Shown here piece after piece: positions 3,806 through 27,645 of a DNA stretch of 39,597 bases (the stretch's first letter is position 1; each line of letters opens with the position of its first letter). Source of the DNA: Klebsormidium nitens (lineage: Eukaryota > Plantae > Klebsormidiophyceae). The stretch is from assembly GCA_000708835.1 (NCBI GenBank), contig DF237213.1:37585-77181 (forward strand). The letters are read 5' to 3'. Position numbers and translations under genes: made by a program. Under the pieces are notes generated by a model that worked only from the letters and a program-made list of their open reading frames with translations, ran no database searches and had not been told where the DNA came from.

Positions 3806-4753
3806 NNNNNNNNNNNNNNNNNNNNNNNNNNNNNNNNNNNNNNNNNNNNNNNNNNNNNNNNNNNNNNNNNNNNNNNNNNNNNNNNNNNNNNNNNNNNNNN
3901 NNNNNNNNNNNNNNNNNNNNNNNNNNNNNNNNNNNNNNNNNNNNNNNNNNNNNNNNNNNNNNNNNNNNNNNNNNNNNNNNNNNNNNNNNNNNNNNNNNNN
4001 NNNNNNNNNNNNNNNNNNNNNNNNNNNNNNNNNNNNNNNNNNNNNNNNNNNNNNNNNNNNNNNNNNNNNNNNNNNNNNNNNNNNNNNNNNNNNNNNNNNN
4101 NNNNNNNNNNNNNNNNNNNNNNNNNNNNNNNNNNNNNNNNNNNNNNNNNNNNNNNNNNNNNNNNNNNNNNNNNNNNNNNNNNNNNNNNNNNNNNNNNNNN
4201 NNNNNNNNNNNNNNNNNNNNNNNNNNNNNNNNNNNNNNNNNNNNNNNNNNNNNNNNNNNNNNNNNNNNNNNNNNNNNNNNNNNNNNNNNNNNNNNNNNNN
4301 NNNNNNNNNNNNNNNNNNNNNNNNNNNNNNNNNNNNNNNNNNNNNNNNNNNNNNNNNNNNNNNNNNNNNNNNNNNNNNNNNNNNNNNNNNNNNNNNNNNN
4401 NNNNNNNNNNNNNNNNNNNNNNNNNNNNNNNNNNNNNNNNNNNNNNNNNNNNNNNNNNNNNNNNNNNNNNNNNNNNNNNNNNNNNNNNNNNNNNNNNNNN
4501 NNNNNNNNNNNNNNNNNNNNNNNNNNNNNNNNNNNNNNNNNNNNNNNNNNNNNNNNNNNNNNNNNNNNNNNNNNNNNNNNNNNNNNNNNNNNNNNNNNNN
4601 NNNNNNNNNNNNNNNNNNNNNNNNNNNNNNNNNNNNNNNNNNNNNNNNNNNNNNNNNNNNNNNNNNNNNNNNNNNNNNNNNNNNNNNNNNNNNNNNNNNN
4701 NNNNNNNNNNNNNNNNNNNNNNNNNNNNNNNNNNNNNNNNNNNNNNNNNNNNN
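3806..4753. other. Assembly gap (948 N)
   Basis: Run of n characters. Confidence 1.
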
Positions 4754-5116: not shown

Positions 5117-7420
5117 ATGAGCGCCAGCAGGAGCCCCGTACCCCGGCTGGACAAGCTGGCCAGTGTCCTGGTTCCGGACGCACCCCGCGCTTCAGCCGCA
5201 GAGTCAGGGGACGAGTCCCAAGCCCAGGCCCGCGCCAGCTCAGCCAGCGAGGCATCCCACCCACCTGCGCCAGACGCCCACCACAGCAACGCTGACCCGC
5301 GGCGCGGCTCCAGGAGTGAGAGGAAGTCCCCGCCCCGGTCACCCCAGGCTCGCCGCCATGGGAAGACGTTTGGCGTCCCCAACTTGGCGCCCCTGAGCGC
5401 CATCATCTCTGGCGCAAATGGCAGCCATGGTCCGGCAAAGAAGCCCAACAGCCAGACCGGCAGAATGAAAGCCGTGCTGCGGGAGAGGGCGGTCTCACGT
5501 GGGGTGCGCAGGGCAGGCTTGTCGGCGGACGCGGGTGCCACCTCATCACCCGAGCCACAGGAGGCAGCTAGCCCTGGCGTCAGACTGCCCACCGAAGCGG
5601 CCCAAACAGCAGAGCGATCAGGGGTGACTGCCAGTGGGGCGGACAGCCCCCCTCTCCTGTCTCCGGAGTCGTCGAGCGCCGCCATGCCCGACGCCGCGCT
5701 GCTGCCCATGGTCACAGAGGAAGACATACAGAGAGCCTTCCGCTACTTTGCGGGGGGGAGGGGTGAGCTGTTACGGTCTGAGAGCGAGTCTGTTGCTTCT
5801 GTCCACCATCAGGGCAGGGCTTCCATATGTGGCAGCTGAGTGATTTGAAGGTTCATGCTTGATAGCTTGTTGGCTTGTTGCAAATTGCAATCATGGCGCT
5901 CTGTTGGATGAAAAAGGCAGTTGCAACTTCTGAGGAAGCATCGATGGTGTGCTCTTTTCGTGGTCTGCTCCTTGCGCCCCTCTGAGCTGAGCCCTGTGGT
6001 GCGCTGCTGTGCAGCTGAAGACGAGTTCACGGACGAAAACTTGCTGGAGCGCTGCTCCCCCTTCTATCCAGGTAAGGTGCCCAGGGTGCTCTTCCCGAAC
6101 CCTTTCTCTTGACGCCCTCCCAAGTCACTGAGTGCAGTGTGGTCCAGCAATGGCTTACTTAGATTAAGGCCGCTCAGCCCATCTTCCAGGGTACGATTCT
6201 CAGCGGTGGACCCGTTGCAGCTTGATCGTCAATGTCGTTCTTGAGTTCCTTCATGACAGAGTTTCAAGGGTGCAACGCTCAAGGTCCTTAAGGCAAACGG
6301 TAGATGATGCACTATCGGATTTTGCCGATGCTATGAAGCTGGCACCTTCAGCGGTGCCCAAATAAGGAGCCGTTCAGCATATCCGACGCCTGAGGTGGCA
6401 GCATGGCGCTCGTGTGTGTGCAGCGCTGACTGGCAAAGACGTGCGGTTGCTGATGGGCCACGGGGCCATGTCTGCCGACAAGCTGCGCAAGGTCGTCCAC
6501 ATCGCCCGCCACCGGGACCTCGCCGCCTTCGACCCCATCGCAGAGGCCTTCAAGGTGGGTCCTGCCGCACACACGCAGAAAAGGAAACATGGGTCTCTTT
6601 TGCCGTCTGTGATGCTCTCTCTGCAGTGCCGCTGTCCCTGCGGGGCAGTGGTTTGACACGGCCGGGCGTCATTTTATGCGTCTTCCCTCTTCTGGCCAGC
6701 GCGACTGTTGCCGATGTGGGCCTCACCAGCCGGTTCCGTTGTGGTGCAGGTATTGGACCCGCGCGAGACGGGCCACGCGGACATGGACGTCCTGGCGGAC
6801 CTGCTCGCGCACCTGCCGGGCGTGCACCGCCTCACCGACGAGGTCAGCCACGCGCCGCACTCAGGACCGCGGTGACGAAGTGATTTGCAAGTCGTGTATT
6901 TTTGAAGTGAACAGACCAACGAAGAGGTGGGAATCCTCAGGTCGGGCCGTAAGGGGGCCTGCTTGATTGCCTGGCAACAGCAGCTTCTAGTCGAGCACCG
7001 GGTAGGAGGAAAACTAGAGCTGGCTCAGGCTTAGCGACGGATTGCATTCGAGCGCTGGAGGTTATTGCAATTTGAGGTGACAGTCAACGGCAGGACATCG
7101 TCATCCCGTCTTCTATGCGCAAAGGTTTTTGGAGCCGACGTCCGGTTCTCATACCCAACCAATCCCGGCAGTCCGGGCCCCTGTCCTTTCTGTGAGCTGA
7201 TACGTGACCCGATGCGAAATGTCGTGTCAAGTAGAGCCCGGTCTGATGCTTCAGTGCCCCCGCCTGGCTGCAGGACCGCAGGTTCCTGCTCAAGATCTCG
7301 GACATCGACGGCGACGGCCTCATTAGCGAGGCCGACTTCCGGCGCTGCAGCACCTTCCTACCCCCGACCGCCCAGGACCAGGCCGTGGCACGAGCCGCAG
7401 CACTGAGGGCGTATTACTAA
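5117..7420 (+). CDS. EF-hand (calmodulin-like C-lobe) protein with long disordered N-terminus, ~357 aa, 5 exons
   Basis: Exons 5117-5762, 6015-6071, 6424-6554, 6750-6842, 7274-7420; all introns GT-AG and phase-consistent. The C-terminus reads FDPIAEAFKVLDPRETGHADMDVL...LTDEDRRFLLKISDIDGDGLISEADFRR, with a canonical EF loop DIDGDGLISEAD. Confidence 0.8.
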
Positions 7421-8334: not shown

Positions 8335-11300
8335 TCAGATTATTGTTATTGAAGTCCGTATTTTCCTCTCTGTCATCATTGTTAGGATGGTAGCGGCCGC
8401 CCTTCCGGCGGCGCCCGGTCCGCCGAGCAGGGCGCTCAGGCGGCGGTAGCCGTCCAGCACGGTGTCCCGCGCGCCGCGCTGGTTGCGCAGCAGCCCGAGG
8501 GCGGCCGCTGCCACGTCCTCGGGTCGGGCCGCGTCCTGGATGAACTCGGGCACCAGCTGCGCAGCAAGGCACGCTAAAGTGGGCGGGGCGACTTCGGCGG
8601 ACGTCACAAAGCCAACACGAGATTGCGGGGCATCAGGCCGGTAGATAAGCTCAAGTCACCGCTCTCAGTAATCCACTGAATAGGACGTGCAATGCACTGA
8701 ACAGTAGGGAAGGCAGGACATCAGATGCAACAACGGCTTTGGGCGTGCAGTGAATGTCGCTCCGCTCACCGGCTCTTCTAGGATCAGGTTGACGAGCGAG
8801 ATGTGCGGGACGCTGAAGTGGAACAGCGTGCGCGCCAGCCACGCAGTCACGGCATCGATGCGATACACCACCACCTGCGGGACCTGCGCAGGGGCAGAGC
8901 AATGAGTGTCGTCAGCACCTCGTCCCTTAAGCGGACTAGCAGAACGGCCTGGCCCACCGTTCACTCGGACATCTTGCGATACAGACTTTCATCTTCTGTC
9001 TCTACTTGCATCAAGTCTCCTCAAGATCCGATTTTGCAGGATGCTTCAATCGGCGACCAGAGGCCCCGTAAAGGAGCTGCTACTCTTCTGGCTCCCAGTT
9101 GGCGGGGGCAGGTGCGGTACCTGGAAGAGCGCGAGCTCCAGGTTGACGGTCCCGGACTTGGTAAGGGCCAGGTCCGCGGCCGCGAGCACCGTGTGAGAGT
9201 CGCCCTGCGCAACACGGTATGCGGAGCAGGCACGCATGTCAGAGGGGCGCCGCGCATCAGGGGCGTGTGTACCAAATGGGCCGGCTGGCGTGATACGAGA
9301 ATAGGGCGATCCTCCGTTGGCGAGGAGACCTTCCGTTCGATCTTTCGAAGAGAAGACACCAGCCCACAGCATGGCCAAACCAGTGGCTTGTTTTGATGCA
9401 GCAGCGGCAAATGTCGACCTACTTATATCCTGAAGAGGCTGGAAACTAAGCTAAAAAGAGAGAGCCAACTGCTAAGAAAGTAACGTACCTTCCAAATGGT
9501 TGCTTCAATTGAGTATGATTGCAGGGACTCTCTGATCGCGTTCTCTAAGTCCGAAGATACCACCGGTATGAAGAAGCGGAGGGGACAGTCCCCGGAACTG
9601 CAGATGACAACGTCTGGTTTCAGAGAAGACATAGTGCACTCCCACTTCAAGTCGCTTGGTTGAAACGTTTGAGCATCCACTAAGTTCGTTCCCATTAAAC
9701 TGCAACGGGCCCACTAGTGTCCTTTTCGAGGATCTGTAAGTCAAAAGCTTAAGGCTGCTCGAAAAGTCGCCAAAATGCCAAACGGATCAGCTAGACATGG
9801 CAATATTGAAACCCATCATTAGCAGGATTTGCGGGTAAGTCCGTTTGACAGGGTTTTTGGGGCCGGGATCCCGTAAGAACGTCGAAGCGTTCCGATCACA
9901 GCGAAGAACCGATCAGAAACGACCTGTGCGCTTTTCTCAGAATCTCCCCAGAGGATGTCAAAAGATTCGGTGTAGCATGACGTACTACTTTATACAAAGC
10001 CAGTTGCTTATCTTGCCCTTATCTGTTCGTAAGATTGCCTGCTGAAAAGGTGAAAGCAATCAAGCAAAACACGCCCAAAGTATTTTTGTCTTTGCAACGC
10101 TCCTTGACAAACTCAGTTCTGGCAAGAACGGGTCAAAGCAACGGTTCGTTCAAGGCCTTCGACTGTCAATCTAGGCCCAACTGGCCCTATGGCTGTGCCC
10201 CACCGTCCCTGCCCCTTACCTGGCCCACTCTTCCTGCACTGCCTGAGCTGCGCGCGCGAGAACCGGCCACACGTGGCGCACCTCCTGCGGCCGGGACGCT
10301 GGCAGCAGCGCCACCACCAGCGTGCCCGCACTCACGCCCAGCGCAGCGCGGGCAGCTGGGCGGTCAGGCTTGGAGGCAACGGCGTCCAGGAGCGGATGGC
10401 CCACCATTTGAACCGAGCCCCCAGCCCCTTGGAAGTAGCCAGCCTGTACTCAAAAGGACAGCGCACTGTATTGGAGAGGAGACTGAGAGTAATCTGTTTG
10501 GCCCGGTGCTCCTGTTTAAGTAGAAAGGGGGTCACTTGACTGCCCCAACCTATGAGAGACCTCTAAACTCCACACATCTTGACGAAGCTGTCTTCATGAG
10601 AAGACTTTAAGGTGAGCCGCACCTCTCTAGGGTAGGTGCACAAGATGGCGTCGGAGATGGCACACAGCGCCGGCGTGCGCGCCTCATTCCAGAGCCACTC
10701 GTTGGGGGGCACGTAGTACACCACCGGGCAGCCATACTGGCGCTTGAGGTAGCGGCCAAACGGGATGTTGACCCCCGGATAGTCAATAAGAATGACGAGG
10801 TCGGGCGGCTGGTCCCGCAGGAAGGCGCGCACTTGGGCCTGGAGGCGCAGCGTGGGGAGGACCAGGGGCAGCGCCTCCAGCAGCCCAATGGAGCTCAGGC
10901 CGCGGTTGTCGCCTGCACACCGAGGGGCACATATGAGGACAAAACAAGAGCGACCGTTCCAGCCATGAAGAACTGTCCTGGGGAAGGCTTCCCAGAACCC
11001 TGACTGCACATGTGCGTACACAATGACAGATCAGGGCCCCCATCTTCGCCAGGATCTCCAAAACCTTCCGCACACAAGTCTCGCATTCTGTACTCAAGTG
11101 CTTGCCTCCGAGGCAATCCCAGCAAGGATTGCATGGCGCTTACCTACCAGCGTGACTCCCGCCTCCTCAATGCCTCCACCTCCCAGCGCGCACACCGTGA
11201 CCTCGTGCCCCGCTGCCTGGGCTTGCTTCCGCACCTCGTGGACCAGGCCCGTGGCGTGCATATCGCCTGAAACATCCCCGGTGCTGATGAACACTCGAAT

Positions 11301-11687
11301 TGGCCTCCCCCTGCTCTCGTTCCTGCCTGGACTCCGCAGGTGGGACTCATCTTGCACCAGCACATGTTCCCAAGCTGCTGTGTCTGAATCTCCAGCGACA
11401 GCAGTAGCTGAACACGTCCTTCTGCATTGTCCACTCACGCGCTGGCGTGACCAAGCTGGTCGGGGAACAAGATTGTCACTGCAGAGAGAGGTACGAGAAG
11501 GTCTGGTTGGCAGACTGGTGCTGCAAGCTGGAGGTTTTCTGCAACGAATTGGATAAGCTCGGGGGAAGTAACTGATTGGGCTCGAAGTGTTAAAACTGTC
11601 TGATAATGTGACTGCAGCCTGTTTGCCAATGCTGACTGACTGGAGCTTGGACGGGGGCAGAAAGAGCTCAGCCACGCCAGCCATCAT
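8335..11687 (-). CDS. lpxB: Lipid A disaccharide synthase (GT19) with ~130-aa N-terminal organelle-targeting-like extension, ~528 aa, 7 exons
   Basis: Exons 11687-11144, 10912-10623, 10443-10220, 9597-9489, 9204-9121, 8883-8770, 8556-8335; all GT-AG and in phase. LpxB motifs: VFISTGDVSGD, SIGLLEAL, LIDYPGVN, YYVPPNEWLW, VGHPLLD, LLPASRPQE, ADLALTKSGTVNLELAL, VPQVVVYR, ISLVNLI, LVPEFIQ. Confidence 0.95.
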
Positions 11688-18875: not shown

Positions 18876-21800
18876 ATGATGGAGCACGGCGGCAGTTCTT
18901 CGAGGTTGCGCTCTTCCCAGAGTGGTGGCTTTCGCGCTGGTTCCAAGGCCACCCATTATGGACATGCTCCTGGTGTCAGCTCGCTGTCAGCCACCTCGGG
19001 GCGGCCCAGTCAGATAGGCGATAGGGAATTGAGCAAGCATGCTCCAATGTCTGCAGCCAGCTCGGCAAAGGCTTCACAACCTGCTGCTTCCAGCTCTGGC
19101 AGTCTTTCTTTCGAGCAAACAGCGGTGGCGTGGACGGATATCGAAGCTGGGGAGGCTGTCGGCTCAGAGGGGCCTGCGCAGAGCATCGCACAGAGTATGA
19201 GGAGAATGTTTCCCCCTGCACAACCACCCGCTCCGGACAACCAACCTGAACTGTTACAGTCAGCTGTGAGTCGGAGGCCAGCCGGGAATGGGGAGGAGTT
19301 TATCATGAGTCCATCGCCACTAGCCATCGCACTAGCCAAAAAAGGCTCCTACTCAAGCCCAGCCGACACACAACCAACAGAGGTAGCAAGCTCTAAGAAA
19401 GGCTCAGGAGCTGAGCAGAGGTCGCTGGCGCCTGCTGGTAGCAGCAGGAGGGCACGCTCAATGCGTGAGGCCAGCAACTTGAAGTTGTCTATTGGGGCTG
19501 ACCATCAAAGCATGACTACTCAGAATGACCGACAAGAACCTTCAAAGGCGTTCAGTCAGAAGAGATCGCTGCTAGATGCACCACTCGCTCCCACTATTCC
19601 TGCCCCCACACATTCGTCGGAGTGGCCCTCGTTGCATTCTGGTGCCAGGCCAAGATCGAACAGTGGTCTTTCAGAGCGCCATGTTGCACCACCAAGTGCG
19701 AGTCGGCATGGTACAGCAGCGTCGTCTTCAGCAGAGCACCCCACGTTGCAGCAGGGTCCCCCTCAGCTGCCATCTGCAGCCCGCGGCTTTGCTCCTGGAG
19801 AGCAAGGAAGACCAGGCCCCATGCACGGGATGGTTGCGGTGCCCCCCATCTTGGCGGAGTGGGTGACCTCCCCCGATGCTGCGGATGTGCTGGCCAAGAT
19901 CCTGGGAGTGGCACGCGCACGCCTGCGGGGCGTGGAGCAGAACGCTGTGCGGTTTGAAGCAGAGGAGGAAGAGGCGGTGCAAGAAGCGCAGGGGCTGCTG
20001 CAGGTGAGACCAAGCTCAAGTAGATAGAGTCAGAGAAGTTACGCAATCTTTCCAAGAGCAGCTTTCTCCTCAAAGTCGGAGCGTCTCAATCAAGTTTGGC
20101 AAACCGCTTGCACTGCTCTTTACTGCATTATGCTTGCTCCTAGTAATGGTCGCATTTGGATGTGGAGCACGCCATTTTTAATATGTGGGGGGTTAGCCCT
20201 TCGCCCGCAGGCTAGATGTGGAGCATGCCAATAAGAACTGTACAGACACCGGTGGTGAAGGTGGTCGGATGAAAGGCTCAGTTCCGGTCGTTTCCTGTCT
20301 GCTGTGTAGAGCCATTTGGATCACAAGGCGGGCGTGGAGGAGAAGCGGCGTGTAAAGCGCGAGCTGGAGCTGATTGAGCAGGAGTTCAGGGACGGGCTGC
20401 GCTGTGAATTCCAGGTCCCCCTGCAAGCGCTGCCCCATGTGTTTGGCGTAAATGGCAGCAACCTGGCGCAGGTGAGATGTTGTTGGGGGGTGGTTGCATT
20501 TGAACCTGGAGGATGGGTACTGAGGTTCTCTGCTTGCATACTCCAAACGATTGAGTGTAATCACAGTTTGACATAGGTTCATTCTTTCCAAACAAGTGGC
20601 ATTGTTTGCACGCTCCAAACTTTCACAATGCTAAGTGAAGTGCCTATCATCAGTCTCCTGCCTTGGGGCAATATTGTTGGGGAGCTGATTCTGAGGCCCC
20701 TGTTGTTGTCTGGCCCCCCCAGGTGCAGGCGGAGTGCGGGGTGGAGCGCGTGCTGGTGGACTCTGACGAGAGCATGGTGCGCATCGTGGGGCGCTCCAGG
20801 GAGGCGGTGGCCGCGGCGCGCTCCCGCCTGGAGTACGACGTGTGGTGCCTGCCAACGGCGCGCGACCTCTTGCAGAGCAGTGGCAACAAGATCGAGGCCC
20901 TGCTGGAGCGCGTGCGCACCAAGAACAAGCTGGCGGAGGCAGAGGTGCAGGAGGACGAACAAGGCCCCTGGGTAAGAGGCGACCTGGCACCGTCATATAT
21001 GCAATCAATTCAGCTACGCTTGGGGCTGAGCCCTCTGCAGTGAAGCTTCGGATTCCCAGTGTCTCTGGCCTCGCTGATGGCCTTCGTTTTGCTGGTGCAA
21101 CTCCTGTCCCCCTTGACGGCGGGAACAGAAAATCTGCTGAGTTTGCCGAATTTTACAATCCCTGCTGGCTAGAAGATGACCTGAGCGGGGTGGTGGCCTG
21201 CAGGTGAGCCTGGTGGGCTGCAAGGCGGTGTTGGCGGAGGCAGCCCGTGTGGTCGAGGGCCAGCTGCAGCTATTCGAGATGATGCAAGCAGAGGTATGGT
21301 GTCCTTGTTCCACCATTGACGGACTCTCGCCTTCCCCATCTCAAATGACAGTTGGCGGTCATGCAAGCACTTTCTGGAATGGGCGACTTTCTTTGACAAC
21401 ATGTTAGAAGCCTGTGATACTTCCAGTTATTGCCGGGCAGCTGTTTTCGACCTTTTTTGGGCCAATTCGTGCTTCTGTTCTTGTGGTTTTAGGCAACTTC
21501 TCACATTTGGTGTTTCTTGTGCAGGCCGCTGAAGTTGCTGACGTCAGCGAGGAGCAGGTACAGCGGGTCAGCCGCACCTGGGGAGTGCAGCCCCGCTCAG
21601 GACCCCCTGCAGGCGGGCCGCCCTTCTTTGCGGCCCCTGCCCGCTTGCCGGCCAACACAGCAAGAGCCCCATCAACCGCGCAGTCCCGGGAGCCAAGGGC
21701 GGCAGCACAGGCAACGACTGGCGAGTGGGAGGACATTGAACCCCCATTGATGGGTCCAGATCAGAAGCATGCATCGGGATGGGGGTCGCAGACTGGGAGC

Positions 21801-24800
21801 CCGGGGCAAGGGCCGGCGGGGAGCGCAGCACGTCCGACTCAACTTGCGCGGTTACAGCCAAGAACGGGAGCAGGAGCGGCAATGGGTGCAACCTCCAATG
21901 GGGTCGTGGACGGGACCGCGGGTGTTGCGCCCACAGGGTGGGGCCAAGCTGCAGCAGGTGGTCATCCTGGGTCGACAACTGGGCACCGGACTGGACCTGC
22001 ACTCGGACAGGGTTCCCTGCCAGCTGTCAGCCAGCCAGCGCGTGAGGCAAGCGGTCCGACTCAAGTGGCGGGAGGGTCTGGTGGGTGGGGAGAGGTGCCG
22101 GCGTTCCAGCATGATGTTCGAGGAGGGGCAGAGCCACGGATCGTAACCCGAAGGCCCCTCGCGGCGACCCCGAATCGGCTGGCCGCCAGCGTGCTGGCCA
22201 CTGTTGTGAGCTCACGCCAGAAGGAGGGGGCACAGATCAGCAGGGGCAGAGGGGGTCTGGGGGCATCTCCGGAGAAGGGCGGTCGAGCAAACAGGAGCGG
22301 GGCGGAGGGAGAGATGAAAGGACGGGCGACCGGGGGTCAGATTGCGGCAGCGCAAGGAGCGGAGCAAGATTATCAGGGGAGCAGCCTGGGCGCGCGTGAT
22401 GAAGAGCCCCCTGGCGCAACTGGCTGGGGGGACACGCCAGCTGCAAACAGTGGGGGACTGCAAGTCGAGCGGGGCAGGGGGCAGATCAAGGAGGCGGCAG
22501 CCGAGAGCGGGTTCTGGACGCTGGGGTCCCCTCCAGGCGCCACCCCCGCTCCCCCGCTGGACCAGGAATCGGTCAAGAGCACCTGGGACGCTGCCTGGCC
22601 CAACTCTGCCGTCGCAGGGCGCACCAACTGGGGGCAGCAGCGGGGGCCCGAGGGCCAGACGATCCTGGAAGGGAGGGGATCCGCCCAGAGAAGCGGCCCG
22701 CCCGGTCCTGCCGCCCCCGCGCCCCTCCCTGGGCCTGCGGCCAGCTCTGAGCATGCCTCCTCGGGGTGGAGAGGGCAGCCGCGCTCGGCCGCCTCAGGGT
22801 CTCTCAGCTCGTCTCAGCCGGGGGCCTCCATCAGCAGGGGCGAGCCCAGCACCGCAAGCTCGGGGCCTGCCCCGCGCCGCAGAGTGGAGAGGATCAACGC
22901 CAACGCGGTGCCGCCCCCTGACGTGTCCACTCTTCTGCGCGCTCCGTCCGGCAAAGCGGGCGTTCGGCCCGTTCTTGCTGCTCCCTCGTCGGCTCCTGCT
23001 GCGGCGGAGCCACTCATCAGCAGGAGCGCGGCCGCTGGGGCTCCTAGCAGGCAGCCAGGTGCTGCGCCGCCAGCCAAGGCCCCCGCGTACAGGCCGGAGG
23101 ATGCGGTCGTTCTCGTGACTGCCAGCGAGGGGAGCGGCTCGGGGCGGGTACCTCCCCAGAGCAGGCCTCTCATCGGCCGGCCTAGCACCACCCGGTCTCA
23201 GCCGCAGGCACCCAAGGCGTCTCCTGTGGTAAGCCTGGAACGGGAAGCTCCCCGGACACCTGCGCAAGACGTGCGGTCCGCCAGCCTGCCCAAGGCTTCC
23301 GGTGCCTCCAAAGGCAGCGTGTCGGAGCGGCCTGAGCGGAAGGCGCTGCTGCGGGCGGTGTCATCGGCGTCGAGCACAGGCAGCACCAGCAACTCGAAGC
23401 TGGCAAACAGGGGACAGGGGGAGGTCGCGGGACGGGGGAACGGGCCAGGACAGGTGGCGCCCCTGGGAGCCTTCCAAGAGGATACGCAAGAAGGGGCGAA
23501 CAAGGAGGCCCGACGCTTGGAGCGCACGCAGGAGGAGGCGTCCCTGCCAGAGGGGAATCAGGAACAGGAGGGAGAGCAAAAGATGGTCAGTGGAAGTGCC
23601 GAAGGGGCGCACGATCCTATGTCAGCGAGGGTGCACGCTGGGGCGAAACAAGAAGCTGAGGGTAGAGGCGCTTCCGTGAAGTCGGTACGGGGGAGCGAAG
23701 TGGAGCCGCTGGGCCCGGCAGAAGTGGCGGAAGCGCGGGATGCAGCACCGGATGCTCCAGGGAGAGGTGAGAGAACCGAGCGGACGGAGGCTGCCACACT
23801 ACGTGGCCAGGACGGAGAGGAGGGGGCGGTCGCTGGCAGCAGCGACAGCGATGGAGTGCAGGCAGTCGAGCAAGGTGAGGCCGCGACCCCCGCAGGTGGC
23901 ACCCCTGCAGGAGACAAGGACAAGAGCGCCACAGGAGGGCCAACGAGCGAGTGCGGAGCCGAGGAGCAGCAACCAGCGGCGGATGCAAAGGAACCGGTAG
24001 AACTGACCCCCAGGGGCAGTGCGCCAGACTCGGTATCCCCGGGCTTTGCTACGGGTACATTTCCGGCTTCTGCGGCTGCGCAGCTACTAAAGCGGTCCAC
24101 GCCCCTTCGTGCTGAGGCACCGGAGTTTGTGGCGGGGGCCGCACGAGCGTGGTCCCCCCTTCGAGCTGAGGCCCAAGTCTTTGTTGCAGGCGTGGGGCTG
24201 GTGGAGGACCCTGCCGCATCGCACGGGGCCTCAAGAAATGCAGCTTGCCCAGGCCCGAAGGCAGGAAACGAGAGCAAGGCAAAGGACGAGGCGAGAGGAG
24301 AGATCAACGGGCGGAGCGGGGGTGGGCAGACCCGCGCGCGGAAGTGGGCCTCAGAGACGAGCGAAGAGGAGCAGCGTTTTGAAGAGGGGCATGCTGCGCA
24401 GCACGGGGCCCCGCAGGGAGAAGGACCGACGAGAAACGGCCACGAAGAGGTTGCTCGGGAGGAAGCCGCTTCTGTAAGTCAGCAGGGACGCGTTGCTGGC
24501 GGGCCTTCGGGGTGGGGCGACGCGAAGAAGCCGGAGGCGGAGGAGAAACCGTCAAAATGGGGGACAGCGAATCATGTGAACGGAGGCCTGGAGGAGGTGG
24601 AGGACCACCCGTTTGCGCAGAGGACGGGGCAGGGCGCGCGGCCGGAATCCGGCATGCGGCCGTGGTCAGACGAGGCGGCGGCTCCGGCTGCGCCGCGCGG
24701 CAAGGGCGCGGGCAGCGGTAGCTGGGTGAGCGACGACTCGGGGAGCGTGCGCAGCGTGGGCGTGGACGTGGGCCGCTGGGCGGAGGAGGCGGCCATCAGC

Positions 24801-27645
24801 ACGCTGTCGGAGCACGAGGCGCTGCTGCACGACAGCCCGCACGGCTTCGAGGGCGCCACCGACAGCGGCAGCGGGCGCGGGGGCAGCACGGGGAGCAGCC
24901 GCGCGGGCAGCAGCGAGGGGCGGCGCGGGCCGGTGTACCGCATGAAGATGCAAAAGTTCCAGCTGGCAGCCATCAAGGCCAACCAGGTCGGGGGGGGGCC
25001 GCCCACCGGGTGGGAGGCCGTGCCCGAGGAGGGGGCCACGCCGGGGAAGGGCCTGCCAGGCACCGAGCCAGGTAGAGATTAAGACTTACTTTAATATGCC
25101 AGAGGCTTGCTGCAGATCTCCCTGAGCATCTCACGTGTCACTCCCTAGTCTATCACTTCGTGGTTAGCGTACCCACACCACTGTCCCATGTCTCTCTTTG
25201 TTTGGCGGTTGCTAAAACCTCGTGTTCAGGGGGAATATACACCATAGTTTTCGGGTTCCCTTCTACGCGTCTCCTTTCGTGGTGACAGTGAAATGCTCGA
25301 CTCATCGAAATTTGCAACAGGCACTTTGAAGCCCGTCTGACTCGGGTTGTTTCTCCATACAGGCCCCTCCGTCGCCACTGACGCGCCGCCTGCTGCCATG
25401 CATTCCGAGCCTCAGGACGTCCGTGACTGGGTGCGCCCCAAGCTGAGGCCGGACAGAGCAGGCCCTCTGTTGGACACTCCGGGACCCAGCAGGTCAGACT
25501 GCCGGCTTCTGATTGTCACCCGCTCATGCAGTCTTCCGTTAACATAGACTCTAAAGAGTCCCCCAATATTCTGGTTTGTGTTTTAGAATGCGTCGCCCTT
25601 CTCCTGCTTCCGTAACAGGTTCATTTTTCCGTGCCTCGTCCATCTCGTTCTGCTCCCTGTTCGTCAGCGTTGTGCTTGTTCCAGCTCCACCCAAGCTTAC
25701 CCGGCCCACTTTTTGCAGCAGGCGGCACTTGCCGGTGCCCGTTCGTGAATCTTTCCTGTTTCCATATTCACAGTTCTCCTGGTCCAGTCGCCTCACTCTT
25801 GCGTCTTCTTGCAGGCGGCTAGCTGTGCCCCCTGCCGCAAGAGCGCCCCACAGGGCAGAGCCCGAGAGGCAGGACCGGCCGCCTGCGCCAGCTCAGCCCA
25901 CAGCCGCAGATGAAAGAGCAGAGCCAGAAGGGGGTTTTCCTGCAGAAGAGGCAGTCCGAGCAACGGGATGGGGTGATGCGGAGGGGGCAGAGCAAGAAGC
26001 GTTGGCAGGGACTGAGGAGGTCGAGGCACGTGGTTGGACCGAGCCGCCACGAAGGCGAGAAGAGGCCAGCAAGGCAGGCGCGCACCGGGGGGAGAGGCGC
26101 GGCGGCAGGCTGGACGAGAGGGCGCGATCAGCCGAGGTGTACAACGAAGCGAACGGGGGTTCAGCTCAGGAGACAGACGTGGCGGTGGGAGCGGAAGAGC
26201 CCGGGGCGCCAACGGGGTGGGGAGGCGACGTGGCGGGGCCGTCGGCAGTGCAGAGTGAGCCGAAGGCGTACCCTCAGGATGAGAGGGGAGCATCAGGGGG
26301 CCTGGGTGTCGCGGATTACGCCGAAATTAGCGAGGAGCGCGAGTATGGCATGGCACCGGCAGACGAGGCGCAGCCAACCGGCTGGCCGGAAGAGGGGAAG
26401 GCCGAGCGGGGAGGGCCGTACGAGGGGCACACAGGCGTTGCGGCTGGCGAAGCCACGAGAGAAGACCCGCACGCTGACGTCAGCATGGAGTACGAGGAGT
26501 CGTGGGACGGCGAGGATGACGCAAGCGCGTCGGAAGCGGAGAGCTCTCCTCGGGGCGGCTTGCAGAAGGCGCCGCTTCGGATTGGGGCGCAGGACGTGCG
26601 GCTGGTGGAGGGGACGCTGCCGGCCACAGCGCTCAAGCGCAGCACCGTCAATCCGACGCTGCTGCCAGGGACACAGCGCGGCGCGGGGCAAGCGCAGGAA
26701 GCGGCGAGCCGCATGGAGGTCGGGGTGCAGGATGCACGGCTGCTGCCCGTGGAACGGTCAGAGAGGCTGGAGAGATCGGGACAGCGCAAGAAAAAAGACC
26801 GGAAGGGGAAGGGGAGCAGGGAGAAGAAGGAGCGGAGGCGCGAGGAGAGGAGGCTCGAGGAGAGGAGGCGCCGCTCGGGTGGTTCGAGAACGCCGCAGGG
26901 GGCCTCGCCTGGCGGGGACCTCAGCGAGAGAGGCGTGCTACCCGGTCCTTTGCGGCAGACGCCCGGTGCCAGTGGGAATAACACGCCGTCGCCGTCCCGA
27001 GTTCCCCCCTCCGGGTGGAATGCGGGGGGGGGATCCCCGGTGACGCCCGCCAGCATCCTGCAGGCCGTGGAGCAGCCGAGCCCCGGGGGGCGGAGCAGCC
27101 GGCTGAGGAAGGAAGGAGGGGGCAGGGGGACCAAGGAGCAGGCACAAACAGCGAATGAAGGACGGACTTGGCAGGACGCGGCAGAGGCGTCCGTGCAAGA
27201 GCGGGCCAGCAATCGCGCAGGTGCATCGTTGGCAGCCGACACGGAGGCGGGCATTCTGGGGAAGGGCGGGCCGGTGGCGCCGAGCAGGACGAGCGAGGAT
27301 TGGCCGCGGGACTCCACTGGAAGACGAGCCAGCAGTCAGCGCCGCAGTGCCGGGAATGCACAGGGTACCCAACCCGATGCCGCGAGAGACGTGAGCCAGG
27401 ACAGCAGCCACCTACAGCGAGAAGAGGGGTCGTCCCAAAAGCGCGAAGTAGGCAGCGTTGGAATCGAGGCAGCGGGGGGGGGCAAGGAGAGCGACGCTGG
27501 GGGGGCCGGGGGTGATGCAGACAAGCAGAGCAGTGGCAGCGGCGGGCAGCGCGGCAGCAGTGGCCAGTCAGCCAAGCGGGCGGTCCGACCGTCGGGAGTG
27601 TGGTCTGTGCGAGATAGGCGAGGGACGTCGACCAGTTCTGCGTGA
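18876..27645 (+). CDS. Very large (~2,378 aa) RNA-binding scaffold: FMRP/FXR-like KH0-KH1-KH2 module plus long disordered GW/WG-rich tail with two PAM2-like motifs, 7 exons
   Basis: Exons 18876-20003, 20310-20471, 20723-20971, 21204-21293, 21525-25071, 25363-25492, 25815-27645; all GT-AG and phase-consistent (7,137 nt). KH1 reads EFQVPLQALPHVFGVNGSNLAQVQAECGVERVLVD...VRIVGRSREAVAAARSRLE (GxxG = GVNG). Confidence 0.8.

What the first reader, a model, noticed from the sequence alone, without database searches (positions are those of the whole stretch)
18876..27645. Candidate GW182-like silencing scaffold in a green-lineage alga: KH module + AGO-hook-like GW/WG repeats + PAM2 in one 2,378-aa protein
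Seen: the spliced product has three KH-like folds, then ~1,800 aa of disordered G/A/S/E/P/R-rich sequence in which Trp recurs mostly in GW/WG context, plus a tandem pair of PAM2-like motifs. Established: animal GW182/TNRC6 bridge Argonaute (via GW repeats) to PABP (via PAM2) for translational repression and decay; plants have no GW182 orthologue, and their known AGO-hook proteins (NRPE1 CTD, SPT5L/KTF1, SUO) have different architectures. Inference: this may be an independently assembled AGO-PABP-RNA adaptor or RNP-granule scaffold. I do not recognise this domain combination from any described plant protein.
Basis: partly seen in the sequence, partly recalled or inferred. Interest (0 to 1): 0.88.

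Follow-up and report, generated by a model that had tools for sequence, protein, structure and literature searches.

The report
Algal FMRP-like KH protein, tryptophan-motif tail
A real gene of the streptophyte alga Klebsormidium nitens encodes an RNA-binding protein whose paired KH domains most resemble those of animal FMRP. They are followed by about 1,800 disordered residues carrying conserved tryptophan motifs of the kind that bind Argonaute, but its proposed role as a GW182-like silencing adaptor is untested and its "PAM2" motifs fail the standard definition.

Summary
The window is Klebsormidium nitens. The gene is KFL_002640140, annotated as a hypothetical 2,054-aa KH protein. Comparison with three related algal loci supports it better than the public annotation does.

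**KH module.** Two KH folds are confirmed. Their closest match by sequence and by fold is human FMRP KH1-KH2. A third fold ("KH0") is unverified.

**Tryptophan motifs.** The 1,835-aa tail is real coding sequence.
- 79% of its tryptophans are conserved in an orthologue that is 41% identical overall.
- GW occurs 12 times against 4.1 expected.
- A sharper motif, [PA][ST]GW, occurs 9 times against 0.15 expected.

**PAM2-like pair.**
- The peptide PLRAEAxxFVAG is under clear purifying selection.
- It gets no Pfam PAM2 hit.
- It has an invariant Arg where PAM2 has Asn, and Ala where PAM2 has Pro.
- It lies inside a 315-nt segment that the public annotation splices out, possibly an alternatively spliced exonic intron.

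**Family.** No homology to GW182 was found. No relatives were found outside Klebsormidium-like algae and two short metagenomic fragments.

**Verdict.** This is a lineage-restricted mRNP adaptor or scaffold with an undescribed architecture. AGO and PABP binding are plausible but not shown. The scan noted the KH module and the GW motifs separately on this same window.

The parts
18876..20003 (+). Exon 1 (376 codons). Mostly disordered N-terminal region with conserved islands. The start codon is supported by the orthologue N-termini.
   Evidence: Against L004 all 4 indels are multiples of 3 and substitutions favour third positions. This includes 19266-19751, which the public annotation treats as an intron. 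The L005 exon-1 ORF is continuous and shares islands there.
19830..20003 (+). Candidate 'KH0' region (model aa 319-376). Conserved, but the fold is unverified.
   Evidence: Conserved in L004, L005 and L007. Single-sequence AF2 predicts a helix. hhalign against KH1-KH2 gives E 0.03 at 1.7% probability. MAFFT repeatedly aligned it to the second halves of KH1 and KH2.
20400..20830 (+). KH1 (model aa about 407-466), split by intron 2. The GXXG loop (GVNG) at 20445-20456 is intact.
   Evidence: Pfam KH_1 at 25.6-30.5 bits against a cutoff of 21.5. AF2 elements E31-35, H38-45, H47-59, E63-67, E72-76, H80-90. PDB phmmer hits are FMR1 and FXR1 KH1.
20834..21539 (+). KH2 (model aa about 468-548), split by introns 3 and 4. 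The GXXG loop is degenerate (SSGN) in Klebsormidium but canonical (GKNG) in the distant relative L007.
   Evidence: AF2 elements E92-98, H101-122, E126-132, E135-143, H144-172 at pLDDT above 90. The tandem superposes on FMRP KH1-KH2, PDB 2qnd. Alignment A3.
21525..25071 (+). Exon 5 (1,182 codons plus 1 nt). Disordered A/G/S/E/P/R-rich tail with conserved islands and most of the Trp motifs.
   Evidence: Against L004, 10 of 11 internal indels are multiples of 3, and third-position bias holds outside 23874-24188.
23875..24189 (+). 315-nt in-frame segment that the public annotation splices out. Candidate exitron. It holds both PAM2-like motifs.
   Evidence: P0005 lacks model aa 1327-1431. The donor-like AGGTGAGGC and acceptor-like TTTGTTGCAG|G are conserved in the window, L004 and L005. 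By my count from the segment lengths (no tool computed it), the equivalent segment is 288 nt in L005 and 313 nt in L004, where a net -2 nt frame change upstream of the motifs makes splicing the only in-frame route.
24102..24137 (+). PAM2-like motif 1 (PLRAEAPEFVAG).
   Evidence: Identical in L004. A tandem 54-nt duplicate of motif 2. No Pfam PAM2 hit.
24156..24191 (+). PAM2-like motif 2 (PLRAEAQVFVAG, continuing into VGLVED). The copy conserved in all three species.
   Evidence: By my count on the printed codons, differences from L005 across LL.RSTPLRAEA.VFVAGVGLVED are about 12 synonymous to 2 non-synonymous.
24663..25040 (+). Most conserved island of the tail (model aa about 1590-1715). It holds four conserved Trp, a serine-rich stretch and a predicted amphipathic stretch ending in PPTGWEAVPEEG.
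   Evidence: Alignment. This part has the lowest substitution rates against L004 (0.045/0.045/0.135).
25363..25492 (+). Exon 6 (130 nt).
   Evidence: tblastn matches in L004 (80% identity) and L005.
25815..27645 (+). Exon 7 (609 codons plus stop). Disordered tail with further [PA][ST]GW motifs and a conserved C-terminal RPSGVWSVR peptide.
   Evidence: All 7 indels against L004 are multiples of 3, with substitution rates 0.11/0.135/0.26 by codon position.
26785..26874 (+). Lys/Arg-rich patch (RKKK...RRRR). Resembles a nuclear localisation signal or an RNA-binding stretch. Overlaps a 15-nt tandem repeat.
   Evidence: A shorter KKKK patch is present in L005.

Best explanation
This is a genuine, selectively maintained gene that has so far been found only in Klebsormidium-like algae. 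It encodes a large mRNA-binding adaptor or scaffold.

**Proposed mechanism.** An FMRP/FXR-type tandem KH1-KH2 module contacts RNA. KH1 has an intact GXXG loop, while KH2 keeps the fold but has lost the loop. The 1,835-residue disordered tail displays an array of conserved Trp-centred short linear motifs, about nine of them [PA][ST]GW[GE]. It also carries other conserved peptides, including PLRAEAxxFVAG. These motifs recruit partner proteins multivalently to the bound mRNA.

**Likely partners.** The most probable partners of the Trp motifs are proteins with tryptophan-binding pockets, meaning Argonaute PIWI domains or CCR4-NOT subunits. If so, the protein would repress or store bound mRNAs in RNP granules.

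**Shown versus inferred.**
- Shown: the gene structure, coding constraint, KH folds, FMRP-like geometry, and motif enrichment and conservation.
- Inferred: RNA binding, the identity of the partners, and the repressive outcome.
For: **Gene structure and constraint.** The model and splice sites reproduce. Intron positions are conserved in L004, L005 and L007. Codon-position bias and frame-preserving indels hold in exons 1, 5 and 7.

**KH module.**
- Pfam KH_1 is above its cutoff.
- The only PDB sequence hits at E<=0.05 are FMR1 and FXR1: 2qnd at 1.1e-4, 2cpq at 5.9e-4, 2fmr at 0.045.
- The metagenomic relative P0004 hits 2qnd at 3.2e-11 across both KH domains.
- The AF2 model has pLDDT 90.6.
- Its top Foldseek hit is 2qnd at E 2.9e-8 with TM 0.56-0.68, while other tandem-KH proteins score TM about 0.3.
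- VIA-align gives Z 12.9, rmsd 3.4 A over 133 of 143 residues.

**Tail.**
- 67% of residues are A/G/S/E/P/R.
- Trp is the most conserved residue: 79% against L005, compared with 41% overall and 49% for the next residue type.
- GW and [PA][ST]GW are strongly enriched.
- By my reading of the alignment, 7 of the 9 [PA][ST]GW sites keep the full pattern in L005, and L005 has extra copies elsewhere.

**Context.** K. nitens has AGO proteins (PMC7994812).
Against: - No expression, splicing or interaction data were available.
- The motif density, about 15 G-flanked Trp in 1,835 aa, is at the low end for known AGO platforms. PMC4476159 reports under 2.5% to over 10% of residues in such peptides.
- GW/WG predictors give false positives in Gly-rich sequence (PMC2910046).
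- Conserved aromatic residues in a disordered region could equally act as non-specific condensate 'stickers'.
- KH2 has lost its GXXG loop, so RNA binding may rest on one KH domain.
- The margin over other tandem-KH folds is modest: Z 12.9 against 11.0 for archaeal APE0754 and 10.5 for Dim2p.
Confidence: 0.55

Rival explanations
1. This is the reader's specific reading: a convergent GW182 analogue. The GW motifs would bind an AGO1-type Argonaute, and the PLRAEAxxFVAG peptides would bind the MLLE domain of poly(A)-binding protein. Together they would bridge RISC to the poly(A) tail to drive repression and decay.
For: - The [ST]GW[GE] context and the conservation of the Trp motifs fit AGO hooks.
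- The PAM2-like peptide keeps Leu3, Ala7 and Phe10, the hydrophobic anchors of LNxxAxEFxP (PMC7356810).
- That peptide is under strong purifying selection in three species.
- K. nitens has AGO1/5/10-type proteins (PMC7994812).
Against: - No homology to any GW182 domain was found.
- Pfam PAM2 gives no hit at E<=10.
- Position 4 is an invariant Arg in place of the Asn that stabilises the PAM2 beta-turn, and position 12 is Ala rather than Pro (PMC7356810).
- The bare L...A..[FW] skeleton is expected 0.42 times by chance.
- The public annotation removes both motifs by splicing. In L004 a frameshift makes their inclusion in a full-length product doubtful.
Confidence: 0.18
2. The protein is a pure RNP-granule scaffold. 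The tryptophans act as aromatic 'stickers' that drive phase separation of a KH-bound mRNP, with no dedicated Trp-pocket partner.
For: - Trp is the dominant aromatic in the tail: 28 of the Trp are counted in the alignment, against 14 Phe and 9 Tyr.
- The Trp sit in flexible G/S/T/P contexts.
- The tail is very long and of low complexity.
- FMRP itself forms granules through its KH domains and disordered region (PMC8903291).
Against: - The flanks are too specific for generic stickers: [PA][ST]GW occurs 9 times against 0.15 expected.
- Whole islands around the Trp are conserved.
- There is a Trp-free gap of about 460 aa between residues 958 and 1419.
Confidence: 0.2
3. The protein is a nuclear AGO4-type platform, comparable in function to the NRPE1 C-terminal domain or SPT5L. 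It would tether AGO-siRNA complexes to nascent RNA through the KH module.
For: - The tail has a conserved Lys/Arg patch that resembles a nuclear localisation signal.
- K. nitens has AGO4/6/9-type proteins (PMC7994812).
- K. nitens uses AGO hooks in its NRPE1-like subunit (PMC11194755).
Against: - No chromatin or transcription domain was detected.
- FMRP-type KH proteins are mainly cytoplasmic and polysome-associated (established knowledge).
- A basic patch alone is weak evidence of nuclear location.
Confidence: 0.07
4. The finding is an artefact. The long G+C-rich exons would be chance open frames, and the GW motifs a by-product of composition.
For: - High G+C (60-70%) produces many long ORFs on both strands here.
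Against: - Frame-preserving indels and third-position bias hold across exons 1, 5 and 7.
- Peptide islands are conserved at 41% identity.
- Composition-preserving shuffles do not reproduce the motifs.
Confidence: 0.02

Closest known systems
Animal FMRP/FXR1/FXR2 (fragile X protein family)
   Same: - Both have a tandem KH1-KH2 with the same inter-domain geometry (PDB 2qnd: Foldseek E 2.9e-8, VIA Z 12.9).
- FMR1 and FXR1 are the only PDB sequence hits.
- In both, the KH tandem is followed by a long disordered C-terminal region.
- FMRP is a granule-forming translational regulator linked to the miRNA pathway (established knowledge).
   Different: - No Agenet/Tudor domains were detected in the 318 residues upstream of the KH module.
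- KH0 is unverified.
- KH2 has lost its GXXG loop.
- There is no clustered RGG box, only six isolated RGG.
- The tail is about six times longer and is built on Trp motifs.
- Identity is only 22-23%, so orthology is not established.
Animal GW182/TNRC6
   Same: - Both are large and mostly disordered.
- Both carry dispersed [ST]GW[GE]-type Trp motifs that are conserved while their surroundings drift.
- Both have a conserved peptide with the PAM2 hydrophobic anchors in the C-terminal half.
   Different: - No detectable homology.
- This protein has KH domains rather than UBA and RRM domains.
- The PAM2-like peptide fails the consensus at Asn4 and Pro12.
- Trp density is much lower.
- It contacts RNA directly through KH, which GW182 does not need to do.
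Plant AGO-hook proteins (NRPE1 C-terminal domain, SPT5L/KTF1, SUO, NERD, SDE3)
   Same: - Both have GW/WG/GWG peptides in a fast-evolving disordered platform.
- In both, the number of motifs is maintained while their positions turn over (PMC4476159).
   Different: - The folded partner domains differ: polymerase, KOW, BAH or PHD domains in those proteins, against KH here.
- No repeat units are seen at the DNA level.
- About 2% of tail residues lie in hook peptides (my estimate), near the lowest value reported for NRPE1.
PAM2-containing PABP partners (PAIP1/2, ataxin-2, eRF3, LARP4, plant CID/ERD15)
   Same: - The L-x3-A-x2-F spacing is shared.
- The peptide is flanked by small residues and sits in a disordered region.
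- It is duplicated in tandem, as the overlapping PAM2 pair is in eRF3 (recalled from memory, not checked here).
   Different: - Arg replaces Asn or Ser at position 4.
- Ala replaces Pro at position 12.
- Conservation extends C-terminally into VGLVED, which is not part of PAM2.
- There is no Pfam hit.

Membership tests
GW182/TNRC6 | Sequence homology to GW182-specific regions or to its UBA and RRM domains | tested here: not met
   Pfam scans of every exon and of P0005 at E<=1 to 10 found no family above its cutoff except KH_1.
GW182/TNRC6 | Array of GW/WG Trp motifs in a disordered region | tested here: met
   12 GW and 10 WG against about 4 expected. 22 of 28 Trp are conserved in L005.
GW182/TNRC6 | Binds Argonaute through Trp pockets and is needed for silencing | not testable with these tools
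   Requires pull-down, co-IP or complex modelling. Single-chain prediction only was available.
PAM2 motif (MLLE ligand) | Match to consensus LNxxAxEFxP (PMC7356810) or to the Pfam PAM2 model | tested here: not met
   Leu3, Ala7 and Phe10 are present. Position 4 is Arg in all species and position 12 is Ala. A regex recalled from ELM gives no hit. Pfam gives no hit at E<=10.
PAM2 motif (MLLE ligand) | Conserved as a peptide in orthologues | tested here: met
   PLRAEA.VFVAGVGLVED is invariant in the window, L004 and L005. Nucleotide differences are almost all synonymous.
FMRP/FXR | KH1-KH2 tandem with FMRP-type packing | tested here: met
   2qnd is the top hit by sequence, by Foldseek and by VIA-align.
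FMRP/FXR | N-terminal tandem Agenet/Tudor domains | tested here: not met
   Exon 1 (376 aa) gives no Pfam hit at E<=1. The region is low-complexity.
FMRP/FXR | KH0 fold before KH1 | tested here: inconclusive
   A conserved 58-aa region lies in the right place.
FMRP/FXR | C-terminal RGG box | tested here: not met
   Six scattered RGG triplets and no cluster.
Type I KH domain | beta-alpha-alpha-beta-beta-alpha fold with a GXXG loop | tested here: met
   KH1 has both the fold and GVNG. KH2 has the fold only, with the loop degenerate as SSGN.
Plant AGO-hook platform | Disordered region enriched in GW/WG/GWG with a compatible composition | tested here: inconclusive
   Enrichment is met. Density is low, and the published composition scores (PMC2910046) could not be run here.

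The most novel reading that the evidence does not exclude
Streptophyte algae independently built a GW182-like effector on an FMRP-type KH chassis. The protein would bind mRNA directly and recruit AGO and/or CCR4-NOT through the [PA][ST]GW array. It would engage PABP through a variant PAM2 with Arg at position 4. Inclusion of that variant PAM2 would be switched by a conserved in-frame exitron at 23875-24189. If true, this would be a plant-lineage answer to how small RNAs repress translation without GW182. It would also push the FMRP-type KH module back before the animal-plant split, or show that it was transferred or arose convergently.
Probability: 0.12. Interest if true: 0.85.

Novelty: new variant of a known kind. 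Interest (0 to 1): 0.55.

Why it matters
- **An open question in plant RNA silencing.** Plants and green algae repress translation with small RNAs but have no GW182, and the adaptor that links AGO to the mRNA-decay and translation machinery is unknown. This conserved protein joins a direct RNA-binding module to an AGO-hook-like Trp array, so it is a concrete candidate to test in an early-diverging streptophyte.
- **Origin of the fragile X family.** I know of no report of an FMRP-type KH1-KH2 tandem outside animals (my own recollection; the literature searches here found none), so this module bears on that family's origin.
- **A practical annotation fix.** The public K. nitens model appears to miss 57 N-terminal residues and to remove two coding segments. 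One of those segments holds the most conserved short motif of the tail.

Tried and rejected
- **Pfam on single exons.** Uninformative, because the KH folds are split by introns. This was solved by using the annotated protein P0005 and the fragment P0004.
- **Searches for distant relatives.**
  - An exhaustive phmmer of exon 3 against 1.84 billion representatives found only 4 short genomic-ORF fragments.
  - Three word-indexed searches found only Klebsormidium-like sequences: exon 5, then the KH module against length windows of 385-1,225 aa and 1,130-3,594 aa. No land-plant or chlorophyte relative emerged.
  - Sensitivity is limited by the short query in the first search and the 5-mer prefilter in the other three.
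- **Single-sequence AF2 of the whole module.** Poor at pLDDT 63, and its Foldseek hits were weak.
- **Two MAFFT alignments that included exon-1 tails and exon-4 pieces.** They misaligned onto KH1 and KH2 and were discarded for folding.
- **The contigs of P0001, P0003 and P0004.** Too short to show a tail.
- **The spliced 2,378-aa protein as a query.** It has no reference and I did not type it in.
- **'K. nitens lacks NRPE1-type AGO hooks' (PMC4476159).** Rejected, because a later paper finds an NRPE1-like subunit with AGO hooks there (PMC11194755).
- **Literature search for the locus tag.** No results. One of the three search terms, an accession, was my guess.

Full report
**1. What is in the sequence**

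Reading the + strand between 18876 and 27645 gives seven exons with canonical GT..AG introns:
- 18876-20003
- 20310-20471
- 20723-20971
- 21204-21293
- 21525-25071
- 25363-25492
- 25815-27645

Joined, they make 7,137 nt, which is 2,378 codons plus one terminal stop.

The window is from Klebsormidium nitens. A search with exon 5 returned the annotated protein KFL_002640140, a 2,054-aa 'hypothetical protein' with a K Homology domain, at 100% identity (P0005).
- It starts at Met58.
- It removes model residues 131-292 (window 19266-19751).
- It removes model residues 1327-1431 (window about 23875-24189), which hold both PAM2-like motifs.

**2. Is the model right?**

Comparative data say largely yes. 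I recovered orthologous loci from public assemblies:
- L004 (Logan SRR23617307), 75% identical in the tail.
- L005 and L006 (JGI 3300060285), 41% identical in the tail.
- L002 and L003 (Logan SRR14092359), close to L005.
- L007, a short and more distant fragment.

Evidence for the model:
- Introns 1-4 sit at the same positions and phases in L004 and L005. The two exon ends that can be read in L007 also carry GT donors.
- Against L004, every indel in exon 1 (4 of 4) and exon 7 (7 of 7) is a multiple of three.
- Substitutions favour third codon positions, for example 0.11/0.135/0.26 in exon 7.
- Introns 1-4, the ones compared, are only 55-71% identical with 5-7 gap events each.
- The stretch 19266-19751, which the annotation calls an intron, behaves as coding: rates 0.144/0.169/0.25 and in-frame indels only. 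Peptide islands inside it are shared with the continuous exon-1 ORF of L002/L005.
- The orthologue N-termini support the start at 18876.

**3. The KH module**

Single exons give no Pfam hit because introns split the folds. On P0005, KH_1 is found above its cutoff: 25.6-30.5 bits against 21.5.

Sequence comparison with the PDB:
- The window's own module hits only three chains at E<=0.05. They are FMR1 KH1-KH2 (2qnd, 1.1e-4, aligned across both domains), FXR1 KH1 (2cpq, 5.9e-4) and FMR1 KH1 (2fmr, 0.045).
- The metagenomic relative P0004 hits 2qnd at 3.2e-11, ahead of FUBP at 5e-7.

Structure prediction:
- Single-sequence AlphaFold2 was poor, at pLDDT 63.
- With a small alignment of orthologue exon pieces (A3), the model reached pLDDT 90.6 and pTM 0.76. 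It shows a long helix followed by two complete beta-alpha-alpha-beta-beta-alpha units.
- Foldseek puts 2qnd first at E 2.9e-8, TM 0.56-0.68 and rmsd 3.7-4.1 A over 136-139 columns. Other tandem-KH proteins reach only TM about 0.3, because their domains pack differently.
- VIA-align gives Z 12.9 (rmsd 3.4 A, 133 of 143 residues). The next hits are two archaeal tandem-KH proteins at Z 11.0 and 10.5.

KH1 keeps its GXXG loop as GVNG. KH2 has SSGN in K. nitens and SSSE in L005, but GKNG in L007. The loop was therefore probably lost within the Klebsormidium lineage.

The proposed third fold, 'KH0' at 19830-20003, is conserved but has no fold support. Two KH folds are confirmed and the third is open.

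No Agenet/Tudor domain and no RGG cluster were found. This is an FMRP-like KH tandem, not a demonstrated FMRP orthologue.

**4. The tail and its tryptophans**

Residues 544-2378 are 67% A/G/S/E/P/R and only 14% hydrophobic.

| Measure | Observed | Expected from shuffles |
|---|---|---|
| GW | 12 | 4.1 (6 of 20,000 shuffles reach 12) |
| WG | 10 | 4.2 |
| [PA][ST]GW | 9 | 0.15 (no shuffle above 3) |

The motifs are dispersed rather than part of DNA tandem repeats.

Trp is by far the most conserved residue type. In the three-way alignment, 22 of 28 Trp are kept in L005 and all 28 in L004. Overall identity to L005 is 41%, and the next best residue type reaches 49%.

By my reading of the alignment, seven of the nine [PA][ST]GW sites keep the full pattern in L005. 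L005 also has extra copies where K. nitens has none. Number is maintained while positions turn over, which is how functional arrays of short linear motifs behave.

The alignment shows many other conserved islands. One is a 125-residue stretch at the end of exon 5 with the lowest substitution rate in the gene.

**5. The PAM2-like pair**

The two copies, PLRAEAPEFVAG and PLRAEAQVFVAG, lie 54 nt apart. L004 has both. L005 has one clear copy, preceded by a possibly decayed one.

By my count on the codons printed, K. nitens and L005 differ across LL.RSTPLRAEA.VFVAGVGLVED by about 12 synonymous and 2 non-synonymous changes. Against L004, 7 of 11 differences fall at third positions (P about 0.04). 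The peptide is therefore translated and under selection in at least some lineages.

As a PAM2 motif it is only partial:
- Against the consensus LNxxAxEFxP (PMC7356810), it keeps Leu3, Ala7 and Phe10, and Glu9 in copy 1.
- It has an invariant Arg where the turn-stabilising Asn sits, and Ala where Pro sits.
- The Pfam PAM2 model gives nothing even at E<=10 on a 46-residue piece.
- The bare L...A..[FW] skeleton is expected 0.42 times by chance.

Conservation shows the peptide is functional. It does not show that the function is binding the PABP MLLE domain.

**6. A possible exitron**

The segment that the annotation removes (23875-24189, 315 nt, in frame) has splice-site-like ends conserved in all three species. 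It starts at a donor-like AGGTGAGGC and ends at an acceptor-like TTTGTTGCAG|G.

By my count from the segment lengths (no tool computed it), the equivalent segment is 288 nt in L005, also in frame.

L004 has the only non-triplet internal indel of exon 5, a net -2 nt. It lies inside this segment and upstream of the motifs. By my reading of the sequence, it includes one extra C in a short C run. The consequences in L004 are:
- The retained form is frameshifted and stops.
- Splicing out the 313-nt equivalent restores the frame.

Taken together, this fits an alternatively spliced exonic intron that adds or removes the PAM2-like pair. A mis-predicted intron combined with an assembly error in L004 is equally possible. 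Only transcript data can decide.

**7. Distribution and literature**

No relative was found outside Klebsormidium-like contigs, apart from two short metagenomic fragments, P0003/L007 and P0004. Both fragments carry the KH module. L007 shows exon ends with GT donors that match the K. nitens structure. P0004's DNA could not be fetched. These searches have limited sensitivity, so absence elsewhere is not proven.

No paper mentions the locus.

From the literature:
- K. nitens has AGO1/5/10-type and AGO4/6/9-type Argonautes (PMC7994812).
- It has an NRPE1-like polymerase subunit with AGO hooks (PMC11194755), so AGO-hook recognition plausibly operates in this alga.
- GW/WG prediction is known to give false positives in Gly-rich sequence (PMC2910046).
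- The density here, roughly 2% of tail residues in hook peptides by my estimate, is at the low end of known platforms (PMC4476159).

**8. Interpretation**

The best-supported reading is a lineage-restricted mRNA-binding adaptor or scaffold. It combines an FMRP-type KH tandem for RNA contact with a long disordered tail that presents a multivalent, selected array of Trp motifs and other short peptides for partner recruitment (confidence 0.55).

It is weakened by the failed PAM2 tests and the splicing uncertainty.
- A partner-less condensate scaffold (about 0.2) and a nuclear AGO4-type platform (about 0.07) are the main alternatives.
- The artefact reading is effectively excluded.

The protein is not a member of the GW182 family. 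It may work like one.

**9. Verdict**

This is a new variant of known kinds, namely KH RNA-binding proteins and GW/Trp-motif platforms, in a combination I found neither in the searched literature nor among the database relatives. It is worth an experimental look in K. nitens. It is also worth correcting the public gene model.

Noticed in passing
window 19266-19751 and 18876-19046: The public K. nitens model KFL_002640140 starts at Met58 and splices out 162 codons of exon 1. Both the skipped N-terminus and the skipped segment show coding-type conservation against L004 and L005, so the annotation is probably wrong here.
   Followed up: yes
window 23875-24189; L004 about 5452-5768; L005 about 6039-6328: A candidate conserved in-frame exitron holds the PAM2-like motif(s). 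The splice-site-like ends are conserved in three species. In L004 a frame change inside the segment makes the retained form non-productive.
   Followed up: partly
L007:3-1092 and P0004 (JGI 3300059473, no DNA available): Two more distant metagenomic relatives of the KH module. L007 shows exon ends with GT donors that match K. nitens and has a canonical GKNG loop in KH2. This suggests the family is wider than Klebsormidium and that the KH2 loop was lost secondarily.
   Followed up: partly
window 19131 region (exon 1, 'AWTDIE') and about 21725 (exon 5, 'EWEDIEPP'); L005 exon 1 'EWVDIEP': A second, acidic Trp motif of the form W-x-D-I-E occurs once in exon 1 and once in exon 5. Both copies are conserved in the orthologues. 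Its partner is unknown.
   Followed up: no
window about 22970-23020 (model aa about 1026-1042, 'INANAVPPPDVSTLL'): A conserved peptide whose first half (I-N-A-N-A) resembles the N-terminal half of PAM2 (LNxxA), but it lacks the Phe at position 10. It is conserved in L004 and L005.
   Followed up: no
window 3806-4753: A run of 948 N, which is an assembly gap. It explains the apparent 13% G+C dip in the composition profile.
   Followed up: yes
window 8335-11687: Another note of this scan (s1-332511) reports a cyanobacterial-type LpxB gene with a transit-peptide-like N-terminus upstream of this gene. I did not examine it.
   Followed up: no
window 26828-26871: A 15-nt tandem repeat (2.9 copies) encodes part of the Lys/Arg/Glu-rich patch of exon 7. 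L004 has a 27-nt deletion here, so the patch length varies between species.
   Followed up: partly
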